The notes beneath the pieces are model-generated. The model worked only from the letters and a program-made list of their open reading frames with translations. It did not search any database and was not told the origin of the DNA. From Styela clava (lineage: Eukaryota): DNA of 64,000 nt. Positions 700 through 53,245 of this stretch are shown in pieces; positions within the stretch are counted from its first letter, which is position 1; every line of letters starts with the position of its first letter. Where the stretch lies: NCBI RefSeq assembly GCF_964204865.1, contig NC_135253.1:15686001-15750000 (forward strand), written 5' to 3'. The position numbers were made by a program, and so were the translations under genes.

Positions 700-1087
700 C
701 TGAGCTGGATTTACCATTGGTCATGGTATGCTAAAGCCTAGTTGCCTCGAAATTCAATTAACTATTCATGTTTAGTCGTTTTTTAATTATAAAGGCTTGT
801 TTCAGAATAAATCAAGTTTAAAATTTTCTGAAAAATGATAATTTTTCAATTAGATTGAGATTTCTTGTTCCAAATATTATATTATATATAAATACGGTCG
901 AATAAACGAATTTGTCAAAGTACTCTACCCATCAAACCTTGAGAACAAAGTATGCTAGTTTAAATTAATTAATCAGTTGATACTGTAATAATGTCTTCAT
1001 TTTTTTAAATAAAAAGAAAATATCGATATATCACTATACTGATTCATTCAAGCAGAACGGGCTTGACAAAGCCTAAATCCGACCCAG
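700..1087. mobile_element. Degenerate hAT-type MITE
   Basis: Imperfect TIRs ctgagctggattt / aaatccgacccag; 8-bp TSD gttatgag/gctatgag (perfect gttatgag in copy 2). Present in all three units. Confidence 0.6.
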
Positions 1088-2870
1088 GCTATGAGACACG
1101 ATACGCAGCAACAATGTTTTACCTGTATTATATATTTTTTTCTGTTATAGCTGCAGATACGGAATTTGTTGTTTGGGGCGACTTTCTGCACCCCTAGAGG
1201 GGGAGGGGTCAGTTCACAATTCAAAAGCGGAGTTCCTAATCATACTTTGAAATGTTCTTCCGCGACATATAGAAAACAAAAATCACTTTCATTCTGAGAT
1301 GTCAGGAGATGTAACAAAACAATTTAGTGAAAACTTACGCATTTTATTAAAAGGGTGCTAGAAATAAAGTGCGTTGAAAAAGCGAAAATACGAATAGTTC
1401 TGGCAATCCTTGTTTAGCCGATCCCCGATGTTAGAATAGGACATTTGTTAATGCAGCGGTTTGCAGCAGTGTATTTAAGTATTGATAGCCGTAATTATAT
1501 GACGTAATAGTTAGAATTGTTTTGGTAGAAAGTTCAAGGATATCTGTCATTTCCTGTTGTCTGCTTAGGGCACGAGTTTAGAGCGTTAGTGTTGTTCCTG
1601 TGCATATTTTAGGCTTGGCTTGATTAAGATTATTTTAGAGCCTAATTTGCTGTTTTGAATTAATATGTAGAATTATAAAGGTAGGATATGTGCTGGTATT
1701 GAGCTTGGTTGTATATTGTTTCGATGAAAATGTAATTGTGATTTCTATTTAAACGGTTTCTTTTTCTGTATTAATATAATATTCTGACAAAGAAGCACTG
1801 AATTCAATTCAGTTACCGCAGTTTCGAAAGTATGATTATCACTTTAATTGGAAGGCAATACATATATATCGTTATGTTATTTATTAATTTCATGGACTCG
1901 TCCTGTGTACAGGTGTATGATTGTTATTTCATGCATTTTTTTTTTTTTTGAATTATTAAAAGTTTCGGAACACGAGTATTAACTGCATTGAATTGGAACA
2001 TAATACTATATCAGTCTGAAGATTTGAAGATAACTCCGAATTTAGTCGTTCACACAATTTCTTTTTACTGTGTGACGGGGATTAATTTTAACAAAAACTA
2101 TTCAGGGCTGCTTACATAATCCATTTGAGCTTGCAATTCTCATTTATTGGCTAGCAAAAATTATAGCTCATTTTTTTTATAAAAATAGTTGTTTCGTGCA
2201 TTGAATATTGTAATAAATAAGTCTATGCTATTACAGTAGCTATACTATTTCAAAATCCCACATAGCCATACTAAACAACAAATCTTCTGATAGAATTCCG
2301 AACATAGATGTCTTAAGTAGCGTTTTAAAATGATCAATATCAAATCGCAATATGTCAAAAACAAACAAAAAATGACAGAGCTTAAATAGATTCGAATACA
2401 CTTATTGACTGCAAGTGTAACCAACGCATGGCCCATTGGTCGGATCCGGTCGGTAAGGCTGCCTCTGATAGAATTTAATTTTCTACATGAGAATGACATC
2501 CAAATTTTGGCTGTTGTCTTGTGACACAAAAAACACAGTGAATCATGACCATTTATATTTTTCGATTTGATTTATTAGCAGTTCTTATTCAATTCGGTAA
2601 AAACAATAGTGGTTTTATGATGACCAGTATAGAAGCTATCTTAAAATAAAAACACAGAATCACCACACGAAATCGAAATTACAAAGGTTAGAAACTGGTT
2701 AATGTGAAAAAATTTGAGGAGATTTCCCAAGTTAAGTGTTTGCACCCAGGGCTGCCGCAATCTGCAAAGTTTGAAAACAAAACTTTCTAATATTTAGGTC
2801 GTTTTAGGTTGTTGGTTCTGTGTGCTGAAATAGTAGAAATTTAACAAGTGATACTTATTAGAATCAGACC

Positions 2871-5158
2871 ATGCATATCACTACCTGCGAAATGCACACA
2901 TGCGGCGAGCCGTTGAGAATCATTGAAACTGGATTTCCAAATATCTCGGGGGAAACAATCTTGGAAAAGATCGCTTACATACGAGAAAATTGCGATGATA
3001 TAAGGAAGTATGTATTTCTGAAATTGCAAAGTTTTTCATATAACTTTTTCTCACAAGGTTAAACTACTAGAGAAACATAAGAACATTACAATGAGGCTAG
3101 AATCCAATAGTCATGTATTCATTTCTCCCTTCCCTTCTATAGGATATCATCTTGTGGAGTATGCGCACCAAGATGTCGCATAGCCTGAACCCTAACTTGG
3201 TACACAATCTGAATTCAGGTTGTGTGTCATCTTGGTGCGCATACTCCAGGAGGTCCCATCTTGTTTTATACTAAATAAACATTTAGTACTGCCAGATTGT
3301 AGTTGGTATATTTGGCTTTGGTGGAATTTAAAGTTGTAGTTAAACCTAATGCAAAAAATGTCATATTTCTGGAATTTATTTAAGGTTTTTGATGCATGAG
3401 CCTCGTGGACATCATGATATGTTTGGAACATTAAGAGTTGAACCAGATTTACCAAATGCAGATGCAGCATTTATATTTATGCACAATGAAGGATATGGTA
3501 CAATGTGTGGACATGCCATCATCGCCTTGGGAAGGTAGAATGTTATGATTAACAGTTTTGTATATTTTTAAAGTACACACATATGCTTGTTTCATGTATA
3601 TTTTTGTTCATTTTCACACCTGATAATTTTGGTAGAAATAGTAGTTCAGCTTGCGTGTGTGACAAAATAAATTAGTATTTTTGGAATTGGCTTATGAGGT
3701 AGGTTTTTCATCTTTTCTGTGTTTGCTGAGATAATAACCAATGTTTTCAGATACTGCGTTGATTACAATATAGTTGAAGCAAAAGAGCCAGAAACCTTGG
3801 TCAATATTCAATGTCCATGCGGGCTTATTCCAACCTATGTTTCGTATGGTAATGGTTTATCTGGGAGAGTGAGGTTTCAAAGTGTGCCATCATTTGTTTT
3901 GAAAATGGGTAAGAAGAAAATGCTGGTGTGATTTTTTTTTGTTATTCAATATGTTACTGTATACAATGTTGGGTAGACCATAGAGTCTCAGCTCAAGTCT
4001 CTTAAACGCTCGTCTGTACATACCAAGGACGAGCACAATGCTATACAACACATTACATTGTACACATACCTAGATGTTAGAATATGTAATATATATAAAT
4101 GGAAATCTCAATATAAAGCAGTTTTTGTGCATACCTATTTGAACAACAACATTGTCATTTTCAGATGTCAATGTGAATGTACCAAACATTGGTATGATCA
4201 CTGTAGACATATCTTATGGAGGAGTATTCTATGCCTTTGTTTCTACTGACGCACTCGGTTTGACACTCAAGGCTGGTGATGCATTGAAGGCCGTGGAAAT
4301 TGGGCAAGCTGTATTGAATGCCACTAAAAAGATTGTAAGACATACCGGTAACTGTTTGAAGCATTTAAAAATTGCCAAACTTAGATATGAAGGGATTACC
4401 TCAAATCAAACTCATATTCACAAAAAAGCCTGTAAATCGGTATTTAGGAAGGACAAGTTTTACGGAACAGGGTAACAGTATAATTAATTACCAATACAAA
4501 AAAGTTTCCGCCATCGTCCTACATTATTTCACATCTTAGTTTTGTAAAACTGCTAATAATGCACAAACATCATAGGTTAAGGTTGAACACCCGGAAAATG
4601 AAGATCTTGGTTTCCTATATGGCACTATAATATATGACAGAACAGAATTAAAATCAAATGATTTGATTCGACAAATGATAGTGTTTGCGGATCGTGAGGT
4701 ATGTAAAATTACACCTTGAATATATATTACTATCAACAACTATTTTCTGGTCTCTTTTATTTAGCAGTTACATTGAAATTGGTGATTTATTTTTTTAAGT
4801 TGGATAGAAGCCCATGTGGTTCAGGAACAGCAGCTCATATTGCTCTGATACACGCAAAAGGTCTACTGGATGTTAATTGTCAAAAAACATTTCAGAGTAT
4901 CGTCAATGATTCAAAGTAAGTACTCTGATGTCTAAAAAGTTATGGAGTGTCCAATTGGTTCTCAATAACTCTTACAATCACTAGCTCATATACGTTTAAA
5001 TTTTTCCAAGGTTTACTGGAAAGGTTGTCAAAAAAGCCAAATGCGGAAACTTCAAAGCTGTCATAGCAGAAGTGTCTGGGAATGCCTATTACACAGGCAA
5101 AAATTTGTTTACATCAGAGGATAAAGACCCCTTAAAGGCTGGTTTCACCGTCCGATGA
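2871..5158 (+). CDS. L3HYPDH: Proline racemase family protein (trans-3-hydroxy-L-proline dehydratase/L3HYPDH lineage) with Cys/Cys active site; 7 exons, 333 aa, intact
   Basis: Exons 2871-3007, 3385-3534, 3751-3908, 4165-4334, 4576-4698, 4800-4915, 5011-5158; all introns GT-AG, phases consistent, total 1002 nt. Motifs MHTCGEPLRII, EPRGHHDMFG, HNEGYGTMCGH, CPCG, DISYGGVFY, HPENEDLGFLYGTI, DRSPCGSG, EVSGNAYYTG, EDKDPLKAGF are colinear with human L3HYPDH. Confidence 0.93.
3155..3248. repeat. Short palindromic (hairpin/MITE-like) element in racemase intron 1
   Basis: tggagtatgcgcaccaagatg...cctgaa pairs with ttcagg...catcttggtgcgcatactcca; a related palindrome lies at about 47240-47315. Confidence 0.75.
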
Positions 5159-5413
5159 TCAGTTGCAAAATTACCTTCAGCAAAAGTGAAAAAATGTATC
5201 CGTCAGACAAGGGTTCTGCACCTCACATATATATCTCTCACGAAGAAAATTGCTGCTTCTCATTACAGCTGCTAAAATTTACATTTCAATATACATGAAA
5301 ATATCTTGTGTATTCTATCATCGAAGTTACAATATAGAATTAAGACTAAAATAAGGTGACTGCTTAGTTGCTACTTTTTGTATCCTCGATTTGGCGTGGG
5401 GGCTGTTCACGCT

Positions 5414-5821
5414 TAGGGCTGGGCATTTCGAATCGAATATTCGAATCGAATAGTAAATTATTCGAATCGGTTCAGAGCTAAATTTCGAGTCGCCGCCATC
5501 TTGTTTTTATCTTTCCGCTAATGGTCGAGGTGAATTCATAATTTTTTTTTTCATTGGAGTCATATTTTTTCAACGAAATTCTAACATATGACTATTTTCT
5601 GTAGTGAGTTATTGATAAAACGTGTTTGTTATTCTGTGTGAACGCTCAGTAATCTATCTGAGTGATTTATTCTATGTCTTCAGTAATTCATTTGTTGAGA
5701 GAACCAATTACTATAATAAAGTCGCTCACAATTATATATTTTCAAGTATTCAAGATTCGATTAGAAAAAATTATTCGATTCGATTCTGAAATCACAAGGT
5801 ATTCTAAAATGCCCAGCTCTG
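5414..5821 (+). mobile_element. hAT-type MITE (family A; TIR tagggctgggcat, internal tcgaa repeats)
   Basis: TIRs tagggctgggcat / atgcccagctctg; degenerate 8-bp TSD ttcacgct/ttcacgag; same family as 13211-13611. Copies at 27547-27954 and 53502-53909. Confidence 0.8.
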
Positions 5822-7644
5822 TTCACGAGAGCAGAGCAGAGTTCTTTATCATACCTTGGAATGTTCTTTCGAAACATATAAAAAGTAAAAATCGCTTTTA
5901 TTCCGAGAAGTCATGAAATGGAATAAAATAATTTTAATGAAAATTTACACATATACTTATATATAAATTAAAAAGATGCTAGAAATAAAAGCGCATTAAA
6001 AAAAGCCAAGCCTTGTCTAGCCAATACCGGGTGTTAGATCAGACCCTCTGATTGAAGATAACTGGGAATTAAGTCGTCCGGACAATTTATTTGAATTTTT
6101 GCCTCGTGGAATGTCACAAATTGAAAGAAAAAATATTAAAAATTGACCCTGATGTTTTTGTAGACATTTTAACATTACAGGAAGTGAGCAAGAATCTTAC
6201 ACTTGGAGGTCAGAAAGAGTTGTTAGTGTAAGTAATGTATAAAGTAAATAACATACATGTTATTATGCTGAGAAATGCTTCTTCTGTACAGAAATATTGA
6301 TAATTTAAGAAGGATTAATTAATAGCGATATAGTGATCATCTTTGGTTTCAGAAGTCTGTTATGGGCTTTGAATTTATATGTCATATAAAAAATTAATAC
6401 TATCAACCTAAGTCGCATTTTAATAAAAAACACAATTACAAAAACCGACTTTGTCTATAATTTGTGGTACATTGCAAATAATGTATGCTCATTTGAATAT
6501 AGTCCATGAATGTTATCAATAAAGTGATTTTATATAGTCTCAGAGAGGCGACATTTTTAGAAATGGAACAGAGTATGGAGTGGTTTTTCTTCTCACGGGA
6601 TTTGAGGAATTTGAATATCAAACTGAACAGGTATGTTGCTTATATAACTATATATGTACCATCGATGGTACTTTTTGTATACGATTTTTGCTTAGAAATG
6701 CATGTTGTTAATAAAGCTATATAAAGTTGAAAGAATGTTTGCAAGCGTCTATTCCACATATTTATAACTTTTTTTCAACTGTTTCTTTAAACTCAGAATT
6801 GGATCGCCCGTGAACTGATGGAATATAGCACTGCCATTTTGTGTCCAAATATTTGTCATTCGATCGTGGAACTAAATAAAGTTATGGAAATTATGTCAAG
6901 GCCCAAACATATGGAAAAATACGTTGACGATTCGGATGCTGGTCTCATCAGGAATGCTCTGATTAAATATCGAACTCTAGAACAGGCAAATATCTCAATG
7001 TTCAAAATATATGACGAAACTCAGTCTTCGGAGTTATTTTCATGTGATGCGTTGATGTATTATATATTCAATGTTTAAATTGTTGATCATTTATTAATAG
7101 GGCCAATTCCAACAACGCAGTTATTGAAACGTTGCATCGTTCATAATATCTTTTAATTGATTACATTTTATTTTCAGGGCAATGTAGGAGACATGACTGC
7201 AAAACTGCGAATCACGAATCCCCACGAAAACGTGTTAAAAGATCAGAGAGAGGGCGGAGGTGAAACTTTTTGTTTAAAACAATGCAAATGAATTTTGAAA
7301 AAATTGTATAAACCTTTGACTGCTCATTGAAGTAAAGCATTGCAAAAAAACGGGAATTTTCCATTGGCTCAATTGTTTATAGAACCTAAAATTCTGTGAA
7401 GTCTAGTTATTTCCATATATGAAGAATGGTCAACATGTGCATGTTGACAATGTGAGTGATATAATAAGTTATTACATAGCAAATTGCATTCAAGAATTTA
7501 GTTCTTTAATCTGGTTTTCAGTAAAATACTTTCGCGAAGACGTTAAGAATATGCTGAAGAAATTGCAAGGCACGCAACAAAGGTATTTTTAGTATAACTA
7601 GATTTGAACATTACTCTTGTCTTGAATATTTTACCAGAATGTCT

Positions 7645-8026
7645 CTTTGGGGGTCCATGATGACTGCACAGGGGCTCCGCAACGAAATGCAAAGGCTCTG
7701 ATCGATCCCTAATGATTGATATCAATCAAAAGGCCGTTGCATCTTATTGGTTGAGTGTTGACTAATATCCATTGCTGTCAGAAAAGGCAATTACAATTTT
7801 ATTGACTTATGCAACGATCTACATGTGGGAATATTCATTTTCAGCTTTACCCATATGATGACAAAATACAGGTCAAGACTTGCCGTGGACTCGGACCTAC
7901 GAGTTTGCTTGTCACAATGTCGTTTGTGTTGTAAATGAAATATTATCCTTCCCCGTTGGTGTGGCACAGAAATTGATACGGCTTAGGATTGGGGTCCCCG
8001 CGGCCTAATAAGTTTGGGAAGCCCTG
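7645..8026 (+). mobile_element. Non-autonomous hAT (Buster/Charlie-like) remnant with decayed C-terminal dimerization domain
   Basis: Decayed YPLLSEKAITILLTYATIYM..FS...KYRSRL coding remnant; terminal gtttgggaagccctg; inverted relative of 16595-16966. Confidence 0.7.
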
Positions 8027-11429: not shown

Positions 11430-14400
11430 TCATGTAATTAATATGAGATCTAAAGCAAAATTGCCTTTAGATGTGCTGATTCCGTCAACTCCATATTGCT
11501 TCGTCCTAGAAATGTTTCCAAAGCATTCATCCATTATGATATTTCTTCCTTTTCTGCAAAAGAAAAAAATCGAATACAAATTAGTGATCTTCTTAGCTAC
11601 TCCATGCTTCATATACTGAAATAAGAAAACCTTTTTTATGACCATGACACAATCGAAAAATTTATTTGTTTTGAAGTATGCCGCATATTTCCATAGCTAG
11701 AGCTTTTTTACAGGATAACATAACATATCATGGGAACATTAAAAGTTTTTTCAAATATGAAAAACGATATAGGATGTTACCCACGCGAGGAAGGCTCCGA
11801 ATGATGAAATTTCTGTGACAGTGTTTACAACAGTAAGATCTGGATTTTCATCGGAAAAAATCATAACGTTTCTTCCAATAACTGGTTTGATATGATCCAC
11901 GAGAATATATTGGCCCCTCAAATAAAATACAATCCTCTTGTTATTCCACTAAGTGTTGCTGATACACATTATAATCTGTTAAATGTTATTGTCTAATTCT
12001 AATACATTTATTTCATGTGCGATCGATGTGTTCCGGCGCTATGAGGTCTAAGGGTTTATAGTGTTGATAGTTTTTTGCAGCATGAGAGACATTCTGTTAA
12101 AATAATCAAGAACCGAGTAATGTTTGAATCTAGTTATACTAAAAATACCTTTGTTGTGTGCCTTGTAGTTTTTCCAGCATTTCTTTAACGTCTTTGCAAA
12201 AGTATTTTACTGAAAACAAGATTAATTAACTAAATTCATGAATGCAATTTGCTTTGTAATAACCTATTATATCACGTACATTTTGTTAAAGTCGACAGAC
12301 ACTTGTTGACCCATTTGTTTTTTTGCAATACTTTATTTCAATAACCAGCCAAAGGTTTATACAATTTTTTTTTTAATTCACTTGCATTATTTCAAACAAA
12401 AATATTCCACCTCCGCCCTCTCTCTGATCTTTTAACACGTATTCGTGGGGATTCGTGATTCCCAGTTTTGCATTCATGTCACCTACATTACCCTGAAAAT
12501 ACAAAGCAATTGTAGAAGATATCATGAGCGATGCAACGTTTCAATAACTACGTTGTTGCAATTGCCCTTTTTTGAATGAGCAACAGTTCGAACATAGAAT
12601 TAATTGAATATCAATGCATCTACATCAATGCATCACAAAGATAACTCCCAAGTCTGCGTTTTGTCATATATTTTGAACATTGACATATTTACCTGTTCTA
12701 AAGTTCGATATTCGACCAGTGCATTCCTGATAAGACCAGCATCCAAATTGTCAACGTATTTCTCTATATGTTTGGGTCTTGACATAACTTCCATAACCTT
12801 ATTTAGTTCCACGATCGAATGACAAATATTTGGACACAAAATGGCAGTACTATATTCCATCAGTTCACGGGCGATCCAATCCTAAGTTAAAATAAAACAG
12901 TTGATTCGAATTTTAAAATTTGTGAAATAGAAGCATGCAAATATTCTTCCAGCTCTATATTGCTTTATTAAACGTCTTAAATAGCGACAACATTTAAACG
13001 AATCTTAAATATTTTAACATCATGTTCATCCGAAAATCTGAAGACGCTCGAAAAAATGAGAGTTTCATAAAACGATAAATAACATTTATGAGGACATTGC
13101 AAATTGAAATGATTTTTACGTAAGTACGGATCCTAACAGCATGCTCAAAACAAACGGGAGATCTGAAATATTTCTGAGGAAAAATCGTATACATTTATAC
13201 CATCGATGGTTATGGCTGGTCATTTTTGAATACCTGATGATTTCAGAATCGAATCAAATAACTTTTTCAAATCGAATCGAATCTCTAATACTTGGAACAT
13301 TTATAATTGTATGTAACTTTCCTATTGTATTGGGTCCTCCAGACACATAAATTACTGGAAACGAAAAATACATCACTCAGACAGATTGCTGAGCGTTCAC
13401 ACACCATGAAAAACACGTTTTCATCAATACCTCACTGCAGAAAAGAGTCTCATGTCAGGATTCCGTTGAAAAAATATGGCTTCAATAAAAAAAAATGAGA
13501 AATTTACCTCGACCATTGACGGCAAGGAAAAAAACAAGATGGCGGCGATTTGAAATTTCTCTCTGAACCGATTTGAATATTTTACTATTCGATTCGAAAT
13601 GCCCAGCCCTATCGATGGTATAAATGTATAGTTATAAAATCAACATACTTGTTCAGTTTGATATTTTTGTTCTTCAAATCCCATGAGAAGAAATACAACT
13701 CCATACTCTATTTCATTTCTAAAAACATCGCCTTTTTAGAATATATAAAATCACTTTATTGATAACAATTTAGAAACTATATGCAAATGGGCACATTTGC
13801 AATGTGCCACAAATTATACGCAAATCAGGTTTTTCTGATTGGGATATTAAGGAAATGTGACTAAGGTTAATAGTATGAATTTTTTATGTGACATATACAT
13901 GCGATACGAATAACAACCCCAGAAACTAAAGATCTCTATATTCCTTCTAATCCTTTATAAATCAATCAATCAATCAAATCGTTTTTATCAGCCATCTCGG
14001 CAAAGCTGAACATAAATGAAAACAATTGAGATCACAAAAATAAGCAGGATATCCGCGAAATGACTATTCGGTCTACCCGTCAGCGGCAACCTTAAAATAG
14101 CTTAAAACTTGAATACAAAATTTGCACAGCGCGAAAATTTTTTATGCGAGAACAGCATCGCCCAAGATGACGCTGAAAAGCAATAATAACCTTATTATTT
14201 ATAGAATCAGGGAATTCCCCCTATATTATTTCGGAGCAGTGCTGTTCCGGCACTTTTAGGTTAACGTTTCTGGAAAAAAGTTAGACAATACATATTAGGT
14301 TTAGTAATAGGACGATACCAAAGAAATGCCAGTACTGAAACTGGTAGCTAACGAGAAAAGATATCTTCATGACAGTAAAAATACCTCAATGAACATGTAA

Positions 14401-16441
14401 TGTGCATGCCAATGTACATGTAATTGTATTGTAACATGAAAAAAAGTACAGATCAACAATCATGTCTAGCAGACACTGAACACTGAAATAAAACTACTAT
14501 GATATTGGGGAATGCAATACACATTTATGAAGAATATAAGGATAGTAAATGGTTGAGTAACTGAGTTTTAAAATTTGGATTTGTTGAGTCTTTAAATAAC
14601 CAATATTTATGTACAGAAACTTTCTGTACTTTTCTATCAGAACAACAACATGTGTGTTGCAAATTACTTACACTAACAATTCTTTCTGAAAGCCAAGTGT
14701 AAGATTCTTGCTCACTTCCTGCAGTGTTAGAATGTCTACGAAAACATCCTGGTCAATTTCTAATATTTCTCCTTTCAATTTGTGACATTCCATGAGGCAA
14801 AAATATTCTTCGCTGACAACAATCAATATTCCGGTGTTTGACTTGTTGTATAATTTCCAAGTCTTGATAAACATTTCAGCCAAACCAATTGTCATATCCG
14901 TGCTATCAAAATCTTGCTCAAATGGAATTCTTGCTTTCAGTAAAGAGCGTTTGTAAACATGCTTGAGAAAACTTGCTACACCAAATCCCCATCCTGAAAC
15001 ACCCCATTCCAAAAGTTTAGGAAGTTGGATTCCTTCATCAGTTTTATTCACCATGTAATCTGCTCTCGTTATTGATAGCTCATACCGGTCCTGGAACATG
15101 ACTCATTTACCATATGTATTTTAAATAACAGATTATTCATAAAGAGTCGTTCAATTACACGATAAATCGGTAGGAAGTGTTAAAAACAACACATGTGAAT
15201 CTGTAGTTAATTTATTACATCGTGAAGACGTGAAGAGTGTTATAATTATATTCATTTTCAGGTCCAGCAGTTGGAAAAATACCATTGCAACGTATCAATT
15301 TCTACACATGCAGTCATGAATCAAGAACTTGCCATGATATATTTTCTGTCAAGTAGAACCCTACCCGCACCTGCAACCGACCTTCGACACTTACATCTCG
15401 GACAAGAATAAACAGTTTACTTACCTCACGATTGACTGATTTCGACACTCTTTCGTATACGCCGAACATTTTTTTAATGAGCCAGTCCGCTTTCGCAACA
15501 CTAAAAGTAAATATATAACTCCATATTCATTCCGCATACCTAAAGATCACAGACAAGCATGAAACGGTATGAGACTTACAAAACTGTCTAAAGACTGATA
15601 TTTTTTCCTGTACTAAGTTCCTATTTATGTGATCTCAGACTAGATATGAGTTTGTTGAATAAGTTGTTATATATTTATGATCACTACATTCGCAAACTGA
15701 GTAGGATTTACCTGTCCAATCCTTTCTTCACAAAATCGAAATCAAAACTGACATTATGATGAAGTTTGTGAAATTCTGGGCAAACTTGGTTTACTCTGCG
15801 CATAACATCAACGGGCATTCTCGAGGGAAACAAACAAAATGGAGCCATCTTGTCATGCTGCAAAACCAACCATTAGTAAATTTTATTCGACATAGATCAC
15901 CTATTTTTAACGCATGGTATCTGGATAAATTGCGAGTGCTTACTAAAAGAGAACAAAACTCTTAATGCGGCTTCAATCGTACGCCCATGTGTATAACTGA
16001 TAACATTTTACTATCAGCGCAACGAATTTTACTTGAATGTAATTATTCTGTGTGGACAAATTTCGGTTGACAAGGATACAGTGAATGAAAATAGTTAGTC
16101 TTATCATTTTTTGGAATTTACTTTCTAAAAATTAAATATTTTGACGGAAGAGATGTTTTTTTTATTTTTCATAAAGGTGTATAGTGATCAAACCTGGCAG
16201 AGCGAGGGACAATACAACCAATTTTCGAGAATTTTAATTTTTATAGAAAAACCTAAAACTAGTTTAATCTTCCACAATAATGATAGATACGTACTGGTTT
16301 TCTTGACTCGTCATACCACTGAAAGAAAAATTTTTGCTTCTTGGCCTCTTCGATCGCTGATGTTGAGCATTTTTTCAACCATTCTTTCGATTGAAATACA
16401 TTTTCAAATTGATGTTCAATAACAAAATTATCAGAAGACAT
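11430..16441 (-). CDS. GSS: Divergent glutathione synthetase-like ATP-grasp ligase (eukaryotic GSS fold); 10 exons, 481 aa, intact
   Basis: Exons (minus strand) 16441-16295, 15857-15712, 15500-15425, 15090-14672, 13718-13649, 12881-12693, 12492-12411, 12209-12149, 11916-11785, 11553-11430; total 1446 nt, phases consistent. Motifs APFCLFPS, RADYM, KLLE, WIARELME..A..CP, VLKDQREGG, YIL..IKP, TEISSFG, SRTK are colinear with human GSS. Confidence 0.9.
13211..13611 (-). mobile_element. hAT-type MITE (family A) in GSS-like intron 5
   Basis: TIRs tatggctggtcat / atgcccagcccta; perfect 8-bp TSD tcgatggt; empty site in the paralog near 6660. Copies at 35909-36534 and 61297-61922, both with an internal insertion. 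Confidence 0.88.
13961..14590 (-). mobile_element. Probable 5'-truncated LINE (CR1/L2-like) 3' end in GSS-like intron 4
   Basis: Minus strand ends in a (gatt)n tail, with an ORF2-like terminus FKTQLLNHLLSLYSS* at the other end; absent from the paralogous intron near 6300. Confidence 0.55.
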
Positions 16442-18369: not shown

Positions 18370-18915
18370 ATTAGGCTTCCCGCTGCTTGTCAACAGGGAA
18401 CCTATTGTATTCCTGTGTTTTATTATTAATATTTATTTATTATTATTTATTATTTTTATTATTTTTTTTTCAAATTGGTCCTACAAACTTGAAATTCACC
18501 TCAAAAGTTCTCTTATGCAGACTCTGCTATAGCCAAAAACAGTTATTCAGTGCAATTGTGGGCATCTGAAAATACAACACACAAAAAACAGAGTACATTA
18601 AAATATAGAAAAAGAAACAAAATTCTCAGTTGTTCTCTGCACATATGTATTCCTCCTGTTGCAATGTGCATTGTCTCATTCAAAAAAATGTAACTTGTTA
18701 ATTTTATACCCATTGAAAAGCGTTTTTTCACCCTCATTGTGCAAACGCCTTGAAGCGTACATTCATCTAAACTTTCATTATCGCTGCCAGATCTCTCGGA
18801 CAAAGTTATAGCCATCTTCAAAACGAAATAAATATTTTTATTTTGAAGTTTGCATGTAAATGGATCCATGAAAAGAGAATTCGCAAAATGCTAAATATTA
18901 CATCGCCTGTATATT
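18370..18915. repeat. Possible interspersed repeat (Helentron/DINE-like start: short hairpin followed by tta microsatellite)
   Basis: aggcttccc...gggaacct stem followed by a (tta)n tract whose length differs between copies; the far end is uncertain. Confidence 0.3.
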
Positions 18916-19314
18916 TTCATGTGTATCTACAATGCTTAATCACCAAAAATTTTTGGCGAAACTATCAAAACTAATTAATACTGAACTAATCGTAAAATAT
19001 AAAACGGTAACATGCATAATGTATTTTTGTATTTTTTGAGAAAGCAATTATTAACAAGGTATGTGCATGTGTAATAAACAAGGTACATATATATACAAAA
19101 TTTCTAGACACGGTTCAGGTTCAGGTGATCTTTCCAGAGAAAAATCAAAATTTATGTATTTGTCGTTAGAGAACACAGATGATAGTCATTGTATAGTAAG
19201 TCAAATATCCAATTCTGAAAACAGTTGGAAGAATTGAATACGATGGATGAGCCACGGATTGCGGTTATAACTAAATTTAGTTGGATTTGTTGTAAATTAT
19301 TTTTTGTAACCTAT

Positions 19315-21193
19315 TTACCCAGCTTTTAACAACAATGGTTTGCTTTCATCAATGATGCTTCTTCGTTGACTCGGAGTGTCTGTTTCATGAACCATCTCTG
19401 CAGAGAGTCGTCTATAGTCTGGTTTAACAAGGGCAACAAGGCAGCGCTGCATAAAACATGCAATCAAAGGAACTATGATAGCCATGGTTGCCCCATGCAT
19501 GTCCATAATTTTTCTAATCACAGCACCAAAAATGAACGCTGCCACCTCGGAAGGAAAATAATATATTGACATAAGTATCGTATTGTCGAACGGGTAGATG
19601 ACTTCAGTGAGAAATTCCGTAAAAATGACGTTGGAGCATATGCGCAAGGCCGCAAGCGCGGGATAGAGAACGATTAACACTGGAAAATATTTACATAAAT
19701 GCCCAAAATATATTCCTCCAGTTACCAGCAACATTCCGACAACGACTGAAAAATAATAATTTTTGAGCTAGTCACAAAATACTGAATTAACGTTTTCTAC
19801 ATGAATTACAGTATTTGCAATAAAATTCCAAGTCTACAGGTAAGTTTGCGAAAAATACACACCTGTACATATGTAGGCCTATATATAATGTTTCAGAAAG
19901 TATGTATTTTTGTCTGGTTACAGGGTAATGCAAAGTTTGCATGTGCGGTATGCAAGAAAATAGCATATGATATGTATTAGAAGATGTATGGATCGTAGAT
20001 AAATAAATTGTGCAATATTAACTGTGAATAGAGTAATTCAAGTGATAAAAGAATAACATATATACTAACACCTAGATGACTTACTTGCCATAGCGAATTC
20101 TTTGAATTTCTTTAATCTGTCCAAATAGTATCCAACAGCAAGACCAGCAATTATCGATGCAAGAGTACCAGCTATTCTAATCCACCCAATTTCACGGTAT
20201 GTTACTTCGGGAAATGTCATTGAGATCAACGAAGGAGCAAGCACTTTTGCTAATATCAAGGCTGACAATCCAAGTGAGTTAGCACAAGCAAGAAGTAGAA
20301 ATTGACGATTTACCAACAAATTCAAAACTAATTTCAAGAAAGATGTGTCTACTTCATGGGAAGCCCTCTCGTTTTTATCCGCTTTTAACGAAGTAAGTAT
20401 GTTAGCCTGCGCTGCTCCCGGCGGTGTTGGTGGTTGATTTTTCAACATAAAAACGAAAAACAATGCTGATATCGTAAGAATGAGAGCAGAAGTTCCTTTT
20501 GTGCTCATGAAAATAAGCCTAATATCATGGGAATTGTTCTCTATTTGAGTAGCGTTTCTGTAAGGAAGACACATAGGGTAGACTAATGCTGCTGTCGCCT
20601 CTCCCAAACTCACAGCGGACCATGTTACGCCGATGGCGGTCGCCGTTTCCTGTGCAGGAAACCAGCTAGCAGCAAGCGTAACCGGTAATATAAAATTGAT
20701 TCCGTTGGATAATCCAGTAAATAGTACTGCAGATAGAATCATCGGATACAGTTTTCTGCAAAAAAATAAGAAGCATATGCGGTTAAAGTGTGTCATACGT
20801 ACACTGTACATTTAAATATTGTGAAAAACATCAACCGTGCGGCAGGTTATTTGGTACATGAAAAATAAAACTATACAAGAATTACATAACTTGCCTGTTT
20901 TTAAATGCAAAAGTTCCTACGCCGATTCCGATACCAGCCGACAGCGTCATTATTGTTGCTTGAAATCGTAACCCAATTTTATTTTTGAAAATTGGTATCA
21001 ACACCGTACATACTCCAGCCACCAAGAAGTTCAACAGCGTCAAAATATCTATTTGAAATGGGGTGACGTTGAAGTAATTCGCGACGACGTCATTTACAAA
21101 ACTGTACGAATAAATTTCACAGAGAATGATCGCCATGCAAATTGATAAAACTGCTAGAAACACCCAACGAATTGGATAAACTTTGTATTCCAT
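19315..21193 (-). CDS. MFS transporter, FLVCR/SLC49-like; 3 coding exons, 466 aa, intact
   Basis: Exons 21193-20895 (GC donor ag|gcaagt), 20755-20085, 19745-19315; total 1401 nt in frame. Motifs YKVYPIRW, IGLR, WFPAQETATA, PPTPPGAAQ, LDRLKKFK, EVIYP, DYRRL; multiple hydrophobic helices. Confidence 0.9.
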
Positions 21194-25003: not shown

Positions 25004-27290
25004 ATGCATATCACTACCTGCGAAATGCACACATGCGGCGAGCCGTTGATCATCATTAAACTGGATTTCCAAATATCTCGGGGGAAACAATCTTGGAAAA
25101 GATCGCTTACATACGAGAAAATTGCGATGATATAAGGAAGTATGTATTTCTGAAATTGCAAAGTTTTTCATATAACTTTTTCTCACAAGGTTAAACTACT
25201 AGAGAAACATAAGAACATTACAATGAGGCTAGAATCCAATAGTCATGTATTCATTTCTCCCTTCCCTTCTATAGGATATCATCTTGTGGAGTATGCGCAC
25301 CAAGATGTCGCATAGCCTGAACCCTAACTTGGTACACAATCTGAATTCAGGTTGTGTGTCATCTTGGTGCGCATACTCCAGGAGGTCCCATCTTGTTTTA
25401 TACTAAATAAACATTTAGTACTGCCAGATTGTAGTTGGTATATTTGGCTTTGGTGGAATTTAAAGTTGTAGTTAAACCTAATGCAAAAATTGTCATATTT
25501 CTGGAATTTATTTAAGGTTTTTGATGCATGAGCCTCGTGGACATCATGATATGTTTGGAACATTAAGAGTTGAACCAGATTTACCAAATGCTGATGCAGC
25601 ATTTATATTTATGCACAATGAAGGATATGGTACAATGTGTGGACATGCCATCATCGCCTTGGGAAGGTAGAATGTTATGATTAACAGTTTTGTATATTTT
25701 TAAAATACACACATATGCTTGTTTCATGTATATTTTTGTTCATTTTCACACCTGATAATTTTGGTAGAAATAGTAGTTCAGCTTGCGTGTGTGACAAAAT
25801 AAATTAGTATTTTTGGAATTGGCTTATGAGGTGGGTTTTTCATCTTTTCTGTGTTTGCTGAGATAATAACCAATGTTTTCAGATACTGCGTTGATTACAA
25901 TATAGTTGAAGCAAAAGAGCCAGAAACCTTGGTCAATATTCAATGTCCATGCGGGCTTATTCCAACCTATGTTTCGTATGGTAATGGTTTATCTGGGAGA
26001 GTGAGGTTTCAAAGTGTGCCATCATTTGTTTTGAAAATGGGTAAGAAGAAAATGCTGGTGTGATTTTTTTTTGTTATTCAATATGTTACTGTATACAATG
26101 TTGGGTAGACCATAGAGTCTCAGCTCAAGTCTCTTAAACGCTCGTCTGTACATACCAAGGACGAACACAATGCTATACAACACATTACATTGTACACATA
26201 CCTAGATGTTAGAATATGTAATATATATAAATGGAAATCTCAATATAAAGCAGTTTTTGTGCATACCTATTTGAACAACAACATTGCCATTTTCAGATGT
26301 CAATGTGAATGTACCAAACATTGGTATGATCACTGTAGACATATCTTATGGAGGAGTATTCTATGCCTTTGTTTCTACTGACGCACTCGGTTTGACACTC
26401 AAGGCTGGTGATGCATTGAAGGCCGTGGAAATTGGGCAAGCTGTATTGAATGCCACTAAAAAGGTTGTAAGACATACCGGTAACTGTTTGAAGCATTTAA
26501 AAATTGCCAAACTTAGATATGAAGGGATTACCTCAAATCAAACTCATATTCACAAAAAAGCCTGTAAATCGGTATTTAGGAAGGACAAGTTTTACGGAAC
26601 AGGGTAACAGTATAATTAATTACCAATACAAAAAAGTTTCCGCCATCTTCGTACATTATTTCACATCTTAGTTTTGTAAAACTGCTAATAATGCACAAAC
26701 ATCATAGGTTAAGGTTGAACACCCGGAAAATGAAGATCTTGGTTTCCTATATGGCACTATAATATATGACAGAACAGAATTAAAATCAAATGATTTGATT
26801 CGACAAATGATAGTGTTTGCGGATCGTGAGGTATGTAAAATTACACCTTGAATATATATTACTATCAACAACTATTTTCTGGTCTCTTTTATTTAGCAGT
26901 TACATTGAAATTGGTGATTTATTTTTTTAAGTTGGATAGAAGCCCATGTGGTTCAGGAACAGCAGCTCATATTGCTCTGATACACGCAAAAGGTCTACTG
27001 GATGTTAATTGTCAAAAAACATTTCAGAGTATCGTCAATGATTCAAAGTAAGTACTCTGATGTCTAAAAAGTTATGGAGTGTCCAATTGGTTCTCAATAA
27101 CTCTTACAATCACTAGCTCATATACGTTTAAATTTTTCCAAGGTTTACTGGAAAGGTTGTCAAAAAAGCCAAATGCGGAAACTTCAAAGCTGTCATAGCA
27201 GAAGTGTCTGGGAATGCCTATTACACAGGCAAAAATTTGTTTACATCAGAGGATAAAGACCCCTTAAAGGCTGGTTTCACCGTCCGATGA
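25004..27290 (+). pseudogene. L3HYPDH: Racemase/L3HYPDH-like copy 2, frameshifted in exon 1
   Basis: ttgagaatcattgaaact (copy 1) is ttgatcatcattaaact at about 25046-25062. The 1-nt loss gives a premature TAA near 25133; the remaining exons are intact. Confidence 0.82.
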
Positions 27291-50956: not shown

Positions 50957-53245
50957 ATGCATATCACTACCTGCGAAATGCACACATGCGGCGAGCCGTT
51001 GAGAATCATTGAAACTGGATTTCCAAATATCTCGGGGGAAACAATCTTGGAAAAGATCGCTTACATACGAGAAAATTGCGATGATATAAGGAAGTATGTA
51101 TTTCTGAAATTGCAAAGTTTTTCATATAACTTTTTCTCACAAGGTTAAACTACTAGAGAAACATAAGAACATTACAATGAGGCTAGAATCCAATAGTCAT
51201 GTATTCATTTCTCCCTTCCCTTCTATAGGATATCATCTTGTGGAGTATGCGCACCAAGATGTCGCATAGCCTGAACCCTAACTTGGTACACAATCTGAAT
51301 TCAGGTTGTGTGTCATCTTGGTGCGCATACTCCAGGAGGTCCCATCTTGTTTTATACTAAATAAACATTTAGTACTGCCAGATTGTAGTTGGTATATTTG
51401 GCTTTGGTGGAATTTAAAGTTGTAGTTAAAACTAATGCAAAAATTGTCATATTTCTGGAATTTATTTAGGGTTTTTGATGCATGAGCCTCGTGGACATCA
51501 TGATATGTTTGGAACATTAAGAGTTGAACCAGATTTACCAAATGCTGATGCAGCATTTATATTTATGCAAAATGAAGGATATGGTACAATGTGTGGACAT
51601 GCCATCATCGCCTTGGGAAGGTAGAATGTTATGATTAACAGTTTTGTATATTTTTAAAATACACACATATGCTTGTTTCATGTATATTTTTGTTCATTTT
51701 CACACCTGATAATTTTGGTAGAAATAGTAGTTCAGCTTGCGTGTGTGACAAAATAAATTAGTATTTTTGGAATTGGCTTATGAGGTGGGTTTTTCATCTT
51801 TTCTGTGTTTGCTGAGATAATAACCAATGTTTTCAGATACTGCGTTGATTACAATATAGTTGAAGCAAAAGAGCCAGAAACCTTGGTCAATATTCAATGT
51901 CCATGCGGGCTTATTCCAACCTATGTTTTGTATGGTAATGGTTTATCTGGGAGAGTGAGGTTTCAAAGTGTGCCATCATTTGTTTTGAAAATGGGTAAGA
52001 AGAAAATGCTGGTGTGATTTTTTTTTTGTTATTCAATATGTTACTGTATACAATGTTGGGTAGACCATAGAGTCTCAGCTCAAGTCTCTTAAACGCTCGT
52101 CTGTACATACCAAGGACGAACACAATGCTATACAACACATTACATTGTACACATACCTAGATGTTAGAATATGTAATATATATAAATGGTAATCTCAATA
52201 TAAAGCAGTTTTTGTGCATACCTATTTGAACAACAACATTGTCATTTTCAGATGTCAATGTGAATGTACCAAACATTGGTATGATCACTGTAGACATATC
52301 TTATGGAGGAGTATTCTATGCCTTTGTTTCTACTGACGCACTCGGTTTGACACTCAAGGCTGGTGATGCATTGAAGGCCGTGGAAATTGGGCAAGCTGTA
52401 TTGAATGCCACTAAAAAGATTGTAAGACATACCGGTAACTGTTTGAAGCATTTAAAAATTGCCAAACTTAGATATGAAGGGATTACCTCAAATCAAACTC
52501 ATATTCACAAAAAAGCCTGTAAATCGGTATTTAGGAAGGACAAGTTTTACGGAACAGGGTAACAGTATAATTAATTACCAATACAAAAAAGTTTCCGCCA
52601 TCGTCCTACATTATTTCACATCTTAGTTTTGTAAAACTGCTAATAATGCACAAACATCATAGGTTAAGGTTGAACACCCGGAAAATGAAGATCTTGGTTT
52701 CCTATATGGCACTATAATATATGACAGAACAGAATTAAAATCAAATGATTTGATTCGACAAATGATAGTGTTTGCGGATCGTGAGGTATGTAAAATTACA
52801 CCTTGAATATATATTACTATCAACAACTATTTTCTGGTCTCTTTTATTTAGCAGTTACATTGAAATTGGTGATTTATTTTTTTAAGTTGGATAGAAGCCC
52901 ATGTGGTTCAGGAACAGCAGCTCATATTGCTCTGATACACGCAAAAGGTCTACTGGATGTTAATTGTCAAAAAACATTTCAGAGTATCGTCAATGATTCA
53001 AAGTAAGTACTCTGATGTCTAAAAAGTTATGGAGTGTCCAATTGGTTCTCAATAACTCTTACAATCACTAGCTCATATACGTTTAAATTTTTCCAAGGTT
53101 TACTGGAAAGGTTGTCAAAAAAGCCAAATGCGGAAACTTCAAAGCTGTCATAGCAGAAGTGTCTGGGAATGCCTATTACACAGGCAAAAATTTGTTTACA
53201 TCAGAGGATAAAGACCCCTTAAAGGCTGGTTTCACCGTCCGATGA
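50957..53245 (+). pseudogene. L3HYPDH: Racemase/L3HYPDH-like copy 3, exon-2 acceptor mutated (probable pseudogene)
   Basis: tttaag|g is tttag|gg here (A>G at 51469). The AG moves 1 nt upstream, predicting a +1 frameshift. Also HNEG>QNEG and S>L in exon 3. Confidence 0.7.

What the first reader, a model, noticed from the sequence alone, without database searches (positions are those of the whole stretch)
3385..4915. L3HYPDH-lineage enzyme with a two-cysteine racemase active site
Seen: MCGH (Cys codon 3506-3508), DRSPCGSG (Cys codon 4815-4817), DMFG, and VF just upstream of the DRSP motif. Known: human L3HYPDH has DRSPTGSG (Cys/Thr) and is a dehydratase. Proline racemases and hydroxyproline epimerases use Cys/Cys, and Thr>Cys substitution converts the human enzyme to an epimerase. 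DMFG matches true proline racemases (human has DMYG; hydroxyproline epimerases have an aliphatic residue there). Inference: an endogenous animal proline racemase, i.e. a host source of D-proline.
Basis: partly seen in the sequence, partly recalled or inferred. Interest (0 to 1): 0.82.

Follow-up and report, generated by a model that had tools for sequence, protein, structure and literature searches.

The report
Two-cysteine L3HYPDH paralogue in a sea squirt
This is an intact, expressed sea-squirt (Styela clava) copy of the hydroxyproline-dehydratase gene that carries the two catalytic cysteines typical of proline racemases; it probably flips the handedness of proline or hydroxyproline, but the two-cysteine state proves common and old in animals, not a special reversion.

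Summary
The finding's span (3385-4915) covers exons 2-6 of a 7-exon, 333-aa gene (2871-5158, + strand). Cys87 (MCGH), Cys252 (DRSPCGSG), Phe59 (DMFG) and Phe242 are at the stated codons. The spliced model is identical to an NCBI protein of Styela clava, "trans-L-3-hydroxyproline dehydratase-like". RNA-derived contigs splice all six introns at the predicted junctions.

- **Lineage:** the protein belongs to the L3HYPDH/T3LHyp-dehydratase branch; the best solved relative is human L3HYPDH (E 7e-105).
- **Cys/Cys is not special and not a reversion:** 35 of 58 scored animal sequences have Cys, including sponges, a coral, bivalves, Ciona, Clavelina and all five cartilaginous fishes. The site flipped at least 7 times.
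- **Direction in Styela:** the Cys/Thr + DMYG copy "H", 76 kb downstream and 92% identical, appears to be the derived one.
- **What is less common:** Phe at "site 1". It occurs only with Cys/Cys, and all 230 Cys/Thr proteins scored have Tyr. It arose repeatedly in scallops, mussels, oysters and Styela.

The most likely function is a cofactor-independent two-base racemase/epimerase of proline or hydroxyproline. The substrate is unresolved, and I found no paper characterising an animal Cys/Cys member. The scan noted this locus before (s1-813312, s1-813345).

The parts
2871..3007 (+). Exon 1 (start codon; EMHTCGEP N-terminal motif), ends in phase 2
   Evidence: PF05544 positions 3-41, E 2.6e-9; junction 3007>3385 seen in spliced contigs
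3385..3534 (+). Exon 2: EPRGHHDMFG (Phe59, codon 3422-3424) and GYGTMCGH (Gly84; catalytic Cys87, codon 3506-3508)
   Evidence: (E 7.3e-14)
3751..3908 (+). Exon 3 (CPCG region)
4165..4334 (+). Exon 4: SYGGVFYAF (Val169; Tyr171 = human Tyr192)
4576..4698 (+). Exon 5: FLYGTI (Tyr220, Gly221 = R2 position) and IVFAD (Phe242 = site 5)
   Evidence: Pfam gave no hit for this exon alone; it aligns in the full-length comparisons
4800..4915 (+). Exon 6: DRSPCGSG, second catalytic Cys252 (codon TGT 4815-4817)
5011..5158 (+). Exon 7 and stop codon (5156-5158)
25004..27290 (+). Copy E of the same gene (99-100% identical exons), 1-nt deletion in exon 1 causing a frameshift: apparent pseudogene
50957..53245 (+). 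Copy F (2 aa differences from D); exon-2 acceptor AAG changed to AGG, so normal splicing is probably lost or shifted by one base

Best explanation
[quoted passage not shown] It therefore most likely works as a cofactor-independent two-base enzyme: one thiolate removes the alpha-proton of a free proline-type imino acid and the other thiol re-protonates from the opposite face (1,1-proton transfer). That gives racemisation or 2-epimerisation rather than dehydration. Phe59 replaces a Tyr that is invariant in every Cys/Thr dehydratase-type protein scored. Together with Gly84 and Val169 in the pocket, this argues for a substrate without the 3-hydroxyl, with L/D-proline the leading candidate. 3- or 4-hydroxyproline epimerisation, or a broad Pro/Hyp specificity as in Thermococcus TlProR, remains about equally possible. 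Shown: gene structure, expression, family, residues, their phylogenetic distribution, purifying selection. Inferred: catalytic activity, substrate, physiological role. The Cys/Cys pair is inherited from the tunicate ancestor, not regained.
For: Gene model and identity to NCBI protein P0294. All six introns spliced in RNA contigs that carry the TTT (Phe59) and TGT (Cys252) codons. Pfam PF05544 on six exons. Best solved relatives are human L3HYPDH (E 7e-105), T. litoralis T3LHypD (3e-98), then proline racemases (AsProR 3e-71, TlProR, TcPRAC), with 4-Hyp epimerases far lower at about 1e-25. AF2 model: mean pLDDT 88.6; TM 0.94 to 6r76 and 0.93 to TcPRAC. The two-Cys pair is the acid/base pair of ProR and HypE (PMC4113996). 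Human T273C gains 3-Hyp epimerase activity (PMC3958920). Phe at R1/site 1 and Phe at site 5 are proline-racemase features, and AsProR and TcPRAC show DMFG in the alignments. All 230 Cys/Thr proteins scored have Tyr at site 1; Phe occurs only with Cys/Cys, in 18 proteins. dN/dS is about 0.16 for D-H, D-I and H-I, so all three are constrained.
Against: There are no biochemical data for any animal Cys/Cys member. Two other pocket positions of true racemases are not matched: Gly84 against Leu127, and Gly221 against R2 Cys/Leu. No NCBIfam equivalog cut-off is reached: T3HypD 340 bits against 540, ProR 301 against 556. The FLYGTI region is dehydratase-like. Members of the superfamily can be promiscuous for 4HypE and t3HypD (PMC4113996), so Cys/Cys alone does not exclude dehydration. 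Four of the five near-identical D-type copies in the array carry defects, which shows relaxed need for many copies. The 230/18 count is not phylogenetically independent.
Confidence: 0.6

Rival explanations
1. It is specifically a 3-hydroxyproline 2-epimerase (trans-3-L-Hyp to cis-3-D-Hyp) or a hydroxyproline-preferring epimerase. This is the natural counterpart of the human T273C mutant and would handle collagen-derived hydroxyproline, not proline.
For: The only experiment on this scaffold, Thr to Cys in human L3HYPDH, yields T3LHyp epimerase activity (PMC3958920). The rest of the pocket (FLYGTI with Tyr220, Tyr171, Met86) is dehydratase-like. The closest relatives are all 3-Hyp enzymes.
Against: Phe59 removes the Tyr hydroxyl that is invariant in every Cys/Thr 3-Hyp dehydratase-type protein scored. 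Gly84 and Val169 also differ from copy H and from the animal consensus. Phe at site 1 is described as disfavouring hydroxylated rings (PMC1964878).
Confidence: 0.25
2. [quoted passage not shown] Cys/Cys and Cys/Thr would then be functionally interchangeable in animals, which would explain the frequent flips.
For: Cys and Thr interchange at least 7 times on the animal tree, even between close relatives such as Haliotis asinina and H. cracherodii, or Lytechinus and Diadema. Promiscuous 4HypE/t3HypD enzymes exist. The best NCBIfam hit is the dehydratase model.
Against: Human T273C is reported to act as an epimerase. Styela keeps a separate Cys/Thr + Tyr copy (H) under purifying selection alongside D and I. 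Phe at site 1 is never seen with Thr.
Confidence: 0.1
3. It is a redundant recent duplicate with no distinct role, on its way to decay like its neighbours.
For: The 22-26 kb units are 98-100% identical including intergenic DNA. Copies C, E, F and G carry a frameshift, a deletion, a lost acceptor, or MCEH plus truncation.
Against: D itself is intact and D-type mRNA is present and correctly spliced. The older D-type copy I on another contig (dS 0.75) is intact with dN/dS 0.16 and keeps Phe59 and Cys252.
Confidence: 0.05

Closest known systems
[quoted passage not shown]
   Same: Closest sequence and fold: E 7e-105 and 3e-98, 46-48% identity in the structural alignments, TM 0.89-0.94. Same length, MCGH, DRSPxGSG, FLYGTI, YGGxFYAF, Phe at site 5.
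   Different: Second catalytic residue is Cys252 instead of Thr273. Phe59 replaces Tyr76, so the Tyr76-Tyr241 hydrogen bond of the closed state cannot form (PMC9309405). Gly84 replaces Ser101 and Val169 replaces Ala190.
Human L3HYPDH T273C mutant (Visser et al. 2012, as reported in PMC3958920)
   Same: L3HYPDH scaffold with a Cys/Cys pair. It is the only experimental precedent and shows 3-Hyp epimerase activity.
   Different: The mutant keeps Tyr at site 1; the Styela protein has Phe. The primary paper was not held in the library, so details rest on secondary citation.
True proline racemases: T. cruzi TcPRAC (1W61), Acetoanaerobium sticklandii ProR (7PB3)
   Same: Cys/Cys, DMFG (R1 Phe), Phe at site 5, same fold with TM 0.92-0.93.
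   Different: Only 33-38% identity. It does not belong to that subfamily phylogenetically. Gly84 stands in for Leu127 and Gly221 for R2 Cys/Leu.
Thermococcus litoralis TlProR (6J7C), bifunctional Pro racemase / Hyp epimerase
   Same: Cys/Cys with Phe at site 1. It shows that such enzymes may accept Pro, 3-Hyp and 4-Hyp alike (PMC4364671).
   Different: Trp, not Phe, at site 5. 33% identity in the structural alignment; archaeal.
Cys/Cys + DMFG paralogues of bivalves (Argopecten P0308; Ylistrum P0442, P0443, P0317; Mytilus P0312; Magallana P0467)
   Same: Same four-residue signature (Phe, Cys, Cys, Phe/Tyr) in the animal L3HYPDH clade, usually beside a DMYG copy.
   Different: Independent origins on the tree, with at least 6 Y/F changes. 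They lack the Gly84 and Val169 changes. All are uncharacterised.

Membership tests
Proline racemase superfamily (Pfam PF05544) | Significant match to the family profile over its full length | tested here: met
   Six exons hit colinearly over profile positions 3-325, each above the 27-bit cut-off
Proline racemase superfamily (Pfam PF05544) | MCGH and DRSPxG(S/T)G motifs and the two-domain fold | tested here: met
   Motifs at 84-89 and 248-255; AF2 model pLDDT 88.6, TM 0.94 to 6r76
[quoted passage not shown] | Nearest sequence relatives and clade | tested here: met
   Best PDB hits are 7qpo and 6r76; it nests among animal 'trans-L-3-hydroxyproline dehydratase' proteins
[quoted passage not shown] | Thr at the second catalytic position | tested here: not met
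   Cys252, codon TGT 4815-4817
[quoted passage not shown] | Tyr at site 1 (DMYG); empirical rule, 230 of 230 Cys/Thr proteins scored | tested here: not met
   Phe59
[quoted passage not shown] | NCBIfam equivalog score | tested here: not met
   NF045511 339.8 bits against a cut-off of 540; the model is built for prokaryotes, so this is weak evidence
Proline racemase EC 5.1.1.4 (Goytia 2007 / Watanabe 2015 signature) | Cys/Cys catalytic pair | tested here: met
   Cys87 and Cys252
Proline racemase EC 5.1.1.4 (Goytia 2007 / Watanabe 2015 signature) | Phe at R1/site 1 and Phe at site 5 (TcPRAC Phe102, Phe290) | tested here: met
   Phe59 and Phe242 align with these residues
Proline racemase EC 5.1.1.4 (Goytia 2007 / Watanabe 2015 signature) | R2 Cys/Leu (TcPRAC 270) and Leu127 pocket residues | tested here: not met
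   Gly221 and Gly84 at the aligned positions
Proline racemase EC 5.1.1.4 (Goytia 2007 / Watanabe 2015 signature) | Racemisation of L/D-proline | not testable with these tools
   Needs an enzyme assay
4-hydroxyproline 2-epimerase (HyPRE/HypE) | Ser/Val at R1, His at R2, Cys/Tyr at site 5 | tested here: not met
   Phe59, Gly221, Phe242; HypE structures are the weakest PDB hits, about 1e-25

The most novel reading that the evidence does not exclude
The Phe59 + Cys/Cys enzymes of Styela (and, independently, of scallops, mussels and oysters) are genuine endogenous animal proline racemases. In Styela the D-imino acid would be consumed by the glutathione-synthetase-like ATP-grasp ligases and exported by the MFS transporter that are co-duplicated with the gene in every 22-26 kb unit. 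That would make the locus an animal-encoded small-molecule biosynthetic cluster producing a D-proline-containing peptide or thiol.
Probability: 0.12. Interest if true: 0.85.

Novelty: new member of a known kind. Interest (0 to 1): 0.48.

Why it matters
I know of no animal-encoded proline racemase or hydroxyproline epimerase that has been characterised, and none turned up in the library searched. D-proline in animals is usually put down to diet or microbes (my own knowledge).

This work shows that two-cysteine versions of L3HYPDH are widespread in animals, from sponges to sharks, yet are all annotated as "dehydratase".
- The catalytic Cys/Thr position has flipped many times.
- Tyr at site 1 accompanies Thr without exception in the proteins scored.
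- Phe arises repeatedly, and only on a Cys/Cys background.

Styela offers a natural test set in one genome: D (Phe, Cys/Cys), I (Phe, Cys/Cys) and H (Tyr, Cys/Thr), with D and H 92% identical. A handful of assays could therefore say whether animals make D-proline or D-hydroxyproline themselves, and which residues switch dehydratase to racemase. If they do, hundreds of database annotations would need changing.

Tried and rejected
- **Joined model not searched.** The joined protein was built only inside scripts from window.fa and was never typed into a search tool. Later a database protein (P0294) proved identical and was used by id.
- **Representative search.** It carries no taxonomy, and its closest full-length hit (P0067, 49.9% identical) turned out to be bacterial and Dongia-like. 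I considered horizontal transfer and rejected it: the gene has six spliceosomal introns, it nests within tunicate and animal sequences, and the whole family is highly conserved across domains.
- **Reversion hypothesis rejected**.
- **Primary paper not held.** Visser et al. 2012 (JBC; PMC3381129) was not available. Its result is cited through PMC3958920 and PMC9309405.
- **AU test.** It did not finish on the 66-row mixture-model tree. A 43-row LG+G4 version did finish.
- **Literature.** Searches for D-proline in ascidians or bivalves gave nothing relevant.
- **Limits.** Contig depth cannot rank expression of D against H. D, E and F are too alike to tell which copy is transcribed.
- **No contig was taken for human.**

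Full report

Yes. Reading 3000-5400 and splicing by GT-AG rules gives seven exons: 2871-3007, 3385-3534, 3751-3908, 4165-4334, 4576-4698, 4800-4915 and 5011-5158. Together they make 1002 nt and 333 codons plus a stop. The finding's span 3385-4915 is exons 2-6.

The motifs sit as described:
- EPRGHHDMFG, with Phe59 at codon TTT 3422-3424.
- GYGTMCGH, with Cys87 at codon 3506-3508.
- IVFAD, with Phe242.
- DRSPCGSG, with Cys252 at codon TGT 4815-4817.

Six of the seven exons, searched separately by reference, hit Pfam PF05544 (Pro_racemase) colinearly over profile positions 3-325. The joined sequence was never typed into a search tool. A database protein found later, P0294 (NCBI "trans-L-3-hydroxyproline dehydratase-like [Styela clava]"), is identical to the model and was used by id from then on.

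**2. Organism and expression**

A paralogue, P0012 = XP_039249424.2 of Styela clava, lies on a contig of 25,446,714 bp. That is the length of the window's own contig C4. The genome is therefore the ascidian Styela clava.

Contigs of four public runs from three studies skip all six introns at exactly the predicted GT..AG junctions, with no coverage in the introns. They therefore derive from spliced RNA. Letter differences separate two transcript types:
- a D/E/F type, with TTT at Phe59 and the D-type exon 6 carrying TGT;
- an H type, with TAT (Tyr), AGT at residue 84 and AAA at residue 65.

Both are transcribed. D, E and F cannot be told apart, and contig depth cannot rank them.

**3. What the protein is**

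By sequence against solved structures:

| Structure | Enzyme | E-value |
|---|---|---|
| 7QPO | human L3HYPDH | 7e-105 |
| 6R76 | T. litoralis T3LHyp dehydratase | 3e-98 |
| 7PB3 | A. sticklandii proline racemase | 3e-71 |
| 6J7C | TlProR | 3.5e-56 |
| 1W61 | TcPRAC | 5e-54 |
| several | 4-Hyp epimerases | about 1e-25 |

An AlphaFold2 model is confident: mean pLDDT 88.6 and pTM 0.88. It superposes on 6R76 (TM 0.94), 7QPO (0.89) and TcPRAC (0.93). NCBIfam gives the dehydratase model as best hit (340 bits, cut-off 540), then proline racemase (301, cut-off 556). No equivalog threshold is reached.

So the protein is an L3HYPDH-branch member of the proline-racemase superfamily whose function cannot be read off by homology alone.

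**4. Active site against the literature**

- The Cys/Cys pair is the acid/base pair of proline racemases and hydroxyproline epimerases. T3LHyp dehydratases have Thr in place of the second Cys (PMC4113996; PMC4364671).
- Goytia et al. (PMC1964878) and Watanabe et al. (PMC4364671) define these features: Phe at R1/site 1 in racemases against Ser/Val in epimerases; Cys/Leu at R2 against His; Phe at site 5 (TcPRAC Phe290) against Cys/Tyr. They name Leu127 as a further pocket residue.
- In the residue-level alignments, Phe59 aligns with R1, Phe242 with site 5, Gly221 with R2 and Gly84 with Leu127.
- The protein therefore has the Cys/Cys pair and both Phe residues of a racemase, but not R2 or Leu127. 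It keeps the dehydratase-type FLYGTI and YGGxFY segments.
- Human Tyr76 (site 1) hydrogen-bonds Tyr241 in the closed state. Tyr192, Met103 and Ser275 line the site (PMC9309405). Here Tyr76 is Phe.
- The human Thr273Cys mutant shows T3LHyp epimerase activity (as cited in PMC3958920).

**5. Paralogues in the genome**

A six-frame search finds about nine copies.

| Copy | Place | State |
|---|---|---|
| A, B | C4, 15.62 and 15.64 Mb | divergent, about 45% identical; MCGE and RGPCGSG |
| C | C4, 15.663 Mb | MCEH, truncated last exon |
| D | window 2871-5158 | intact (this finding) |
| E | window 25004-27290 | 1-nt deletion in exon 1 |
| F | window 50957-53245 | exon-2 acceptor AAG changed to AGG; H79Q, S127L |
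| G | C4, 15.759 Mb | 16-nt deletion in exon 2 |
| H | 5.4 kb beyond G | intact; DMYG, GYSTMCGH, YGGAFY, DRSPTGSG, i.e. a canonical Cys/Thr dehydratase signature |
| I | contig C6 | intact; exons 5 and 6 fused; DMFG and Cys/Cys (P0295) |

C to G sit in 22-26 kb units that are 98-100% identical even in intergenic DNA. H is the only copy with Thr.

D and H differ at 28 of 333 residues. These include four active-site or near-site positions: F59Y, G84S, V169A and C252T.

**6. Is Cys/Cys unusual, and is it a reversion?**

No. Among named animal proteins retrieved, the second catalytic residue is as follows:
- **Cys:** sponges, Acropora, most bivalves, Patella, Lytechinus, Holothuria, Ciona, Clavelina and all five cartilaginous fishes.
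- **Thr:** bony vertebrates, hemichordates, crinoids, Amphiura, Diadema, Lingula, Priapulus, Tubulanus, Octopus and one Haliotis.

The count is 35 Cys against 23 Thr among the 58 scored.

On a maximum-likelihood tree the state changes at least 7 times, and Tyr/Phe at site 1 at least 6 times. Several strongly supported small clades hold both states:
- Lytechinus and Diadema (98);
- the two Haliotis species (100);
- sharks within vertebrates (99);
- the Styela copies D, I and H (96).

An AU test rejects a single clade of Thr-bearing sequences (p 1.2e-6).

The Styela copies cluster together (99) and are sister to Ciona and Clavelina (93), which are Cys/Cys with Tyr. Synonymous divergence is 0.27 for D-H and 0.75 for both D-I and H-I. 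dN/dS is about 0.16 for all three pairs.

With I (Cys) branching first and the outgroups carrying Cys, parsimony puts a single Cys-to-Thr change (TGT to ACT, two substitutions) on the H branch. D therefore retains the ancestral tunicate state, and H is a convergent re-creation of the vertebrate-type site.

One caveat applies. The D-H distance rises from 5' (dS 0.12) to 3' (0.40), and exon 6 alone groups D with I (11 differences against 15 of 116). Gene conversion has therefore blurred the history.

**7. What is distinctive**

Across 306 scorable proteins from all searches, all 230 Cys/Thr proteins have Tyr at site 1. Phe occurs in 18 proteins, all Cys/Cys. These counts are not phylogenetically independent.

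Phe + Cys/Cys has arisen separately in pectinids (as an old paralogue clade, support 99), in Mytilus, in oysters and in Styela. This pattern suggests that the Tyr hydroxyl is needed for dehydration of 3-Hyp and becomes dispensable once the enzyme is a two-base epimerase. That fits a shift towards non-hydroxylated proline, but does not prove it.

**8. Surroundings**

Each duplicated unit also carries two further genes on the minus strand:
- a highly divergent glutathione-synthetase-like ATP-grasp gene (PF03917, E 8e-4 on one exon);
- an MFS transporter (PF07690, E 2e-10).

Close copies of both are confined to this 130-kb locus on C4. The canonical GSS is on C18. Copy I on C6 has neither nearby among the hits listed.

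The co-occurrence within the array is by segmental duplication, so it counts as one observation, not five. It keeps the "biosynthetic cluster" idea of earlier notes s1-813312 and s1-813345 alive as a low-probability novel reading.

**9. Verdict**

The gene is a real, expressed, two-cysteine L3HYPDH paralogue. It is most likely a racemase/epimerase of proline or hydroxyproline (0.6). Proline itself is the leading single substrate but is not established.

It is not a reversion, and its Cys/Cys site is common in animals. The gene is already annotated, probably misleadingly, as dehydratase-like. I found no paper characterising any animal Cys/Cys member. The biochemical question therefore remains open and is easily testable, with Styela D, H and I as a natural set of variants.

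Noticed in passing
window 1900-64000 (for example 2926-3225, 25058-25357, 51012-51311): Three tandem copies of a 22-26 kb unit at 98-100% identity, intergenic DNA included. Each carries a ProR-like gene, a GSS-like ATP-grasp gene and an MFS transporter. Two more units lie just outside the window on C4. This is either very recent segmental duplication or an assembly duplication.
   Followed up: partly
L016:6853-9088 (G000:C4:15764853-15767088): Copy H is an intact paralogue 92% identical to D, with the canonical dehydratase signature (DMYG, GYSTMCGH, DRSPTGSG). It is expressed (H-type contig in run X1). By parsimony it is a convergent origin of the Cys/Thr site from a Cys/Cys ancestor.
   Followed up: yes
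L013, L014 (G000:C4:15.62-15.64 Mb); proteins P0012, P0341: A divergent tunicate subfamily has MCGE instead of MCGH and RG(P/Y)CGS instead of DRSPCGS, and no DMxG. It is shared by Styela (copies A and B) and Ciona intestinalis (35% identical). The His and Asp that bind substrate in TcPRAC are lost, so its function is probably different.
   Followed up: partly
window 3155-3248 (intron 1): A 35-nt inverted repeat (89% complementary, 24-nt spacer) sits in intron 1. It has a summed contig depth of 1,000-8,000 in the RNA runs, while the rest of the intron has none. It is probably a MITE-like repeat that is abundant or transcribed elsewhere in the genome.
   Followed up: no
window 11430-16441 and 18500-21235 (minus strand): The GSS-like gene matches Pfam PF03917 only weakly (E 8e-4), and the MFS_1 transporter matches at E 2e-10. 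Close paralogues of both occur only in this C4 locus; the canonical GSS is on C18.
   Followed up: partly
proteins P0487, P0489, P0501, P0513, P0515: All five cartilaginous-fish L3HYPDH orthologues sampled have Cys/Cys (DRSPCGSG with DMYG or DMYA), whereas bony vertebrates have Thr. The 'vertebrate dehydratase' state is therefore not universal in vertebrates.
   Followed up: partly
protein P0067 and relatives: In the 50%-identity library, the closest full-length representative to the Styela protein is an alphaproteobacterial (Dongia-like) Cys/Thr enzyme at 49.9% identity. This is about as close as other animals' proteins are, and shows how conserved this branch is across domains.
   Followed up: partly
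L017 (G000:C6:10873600-10877170, minus strand): Copy I has lost the intron between exons 5 and 6 and reads ten codons past the usual stop. It is intact, has Cys/Cys + DMFG, and is under purifying selection.
   Followed up: partly
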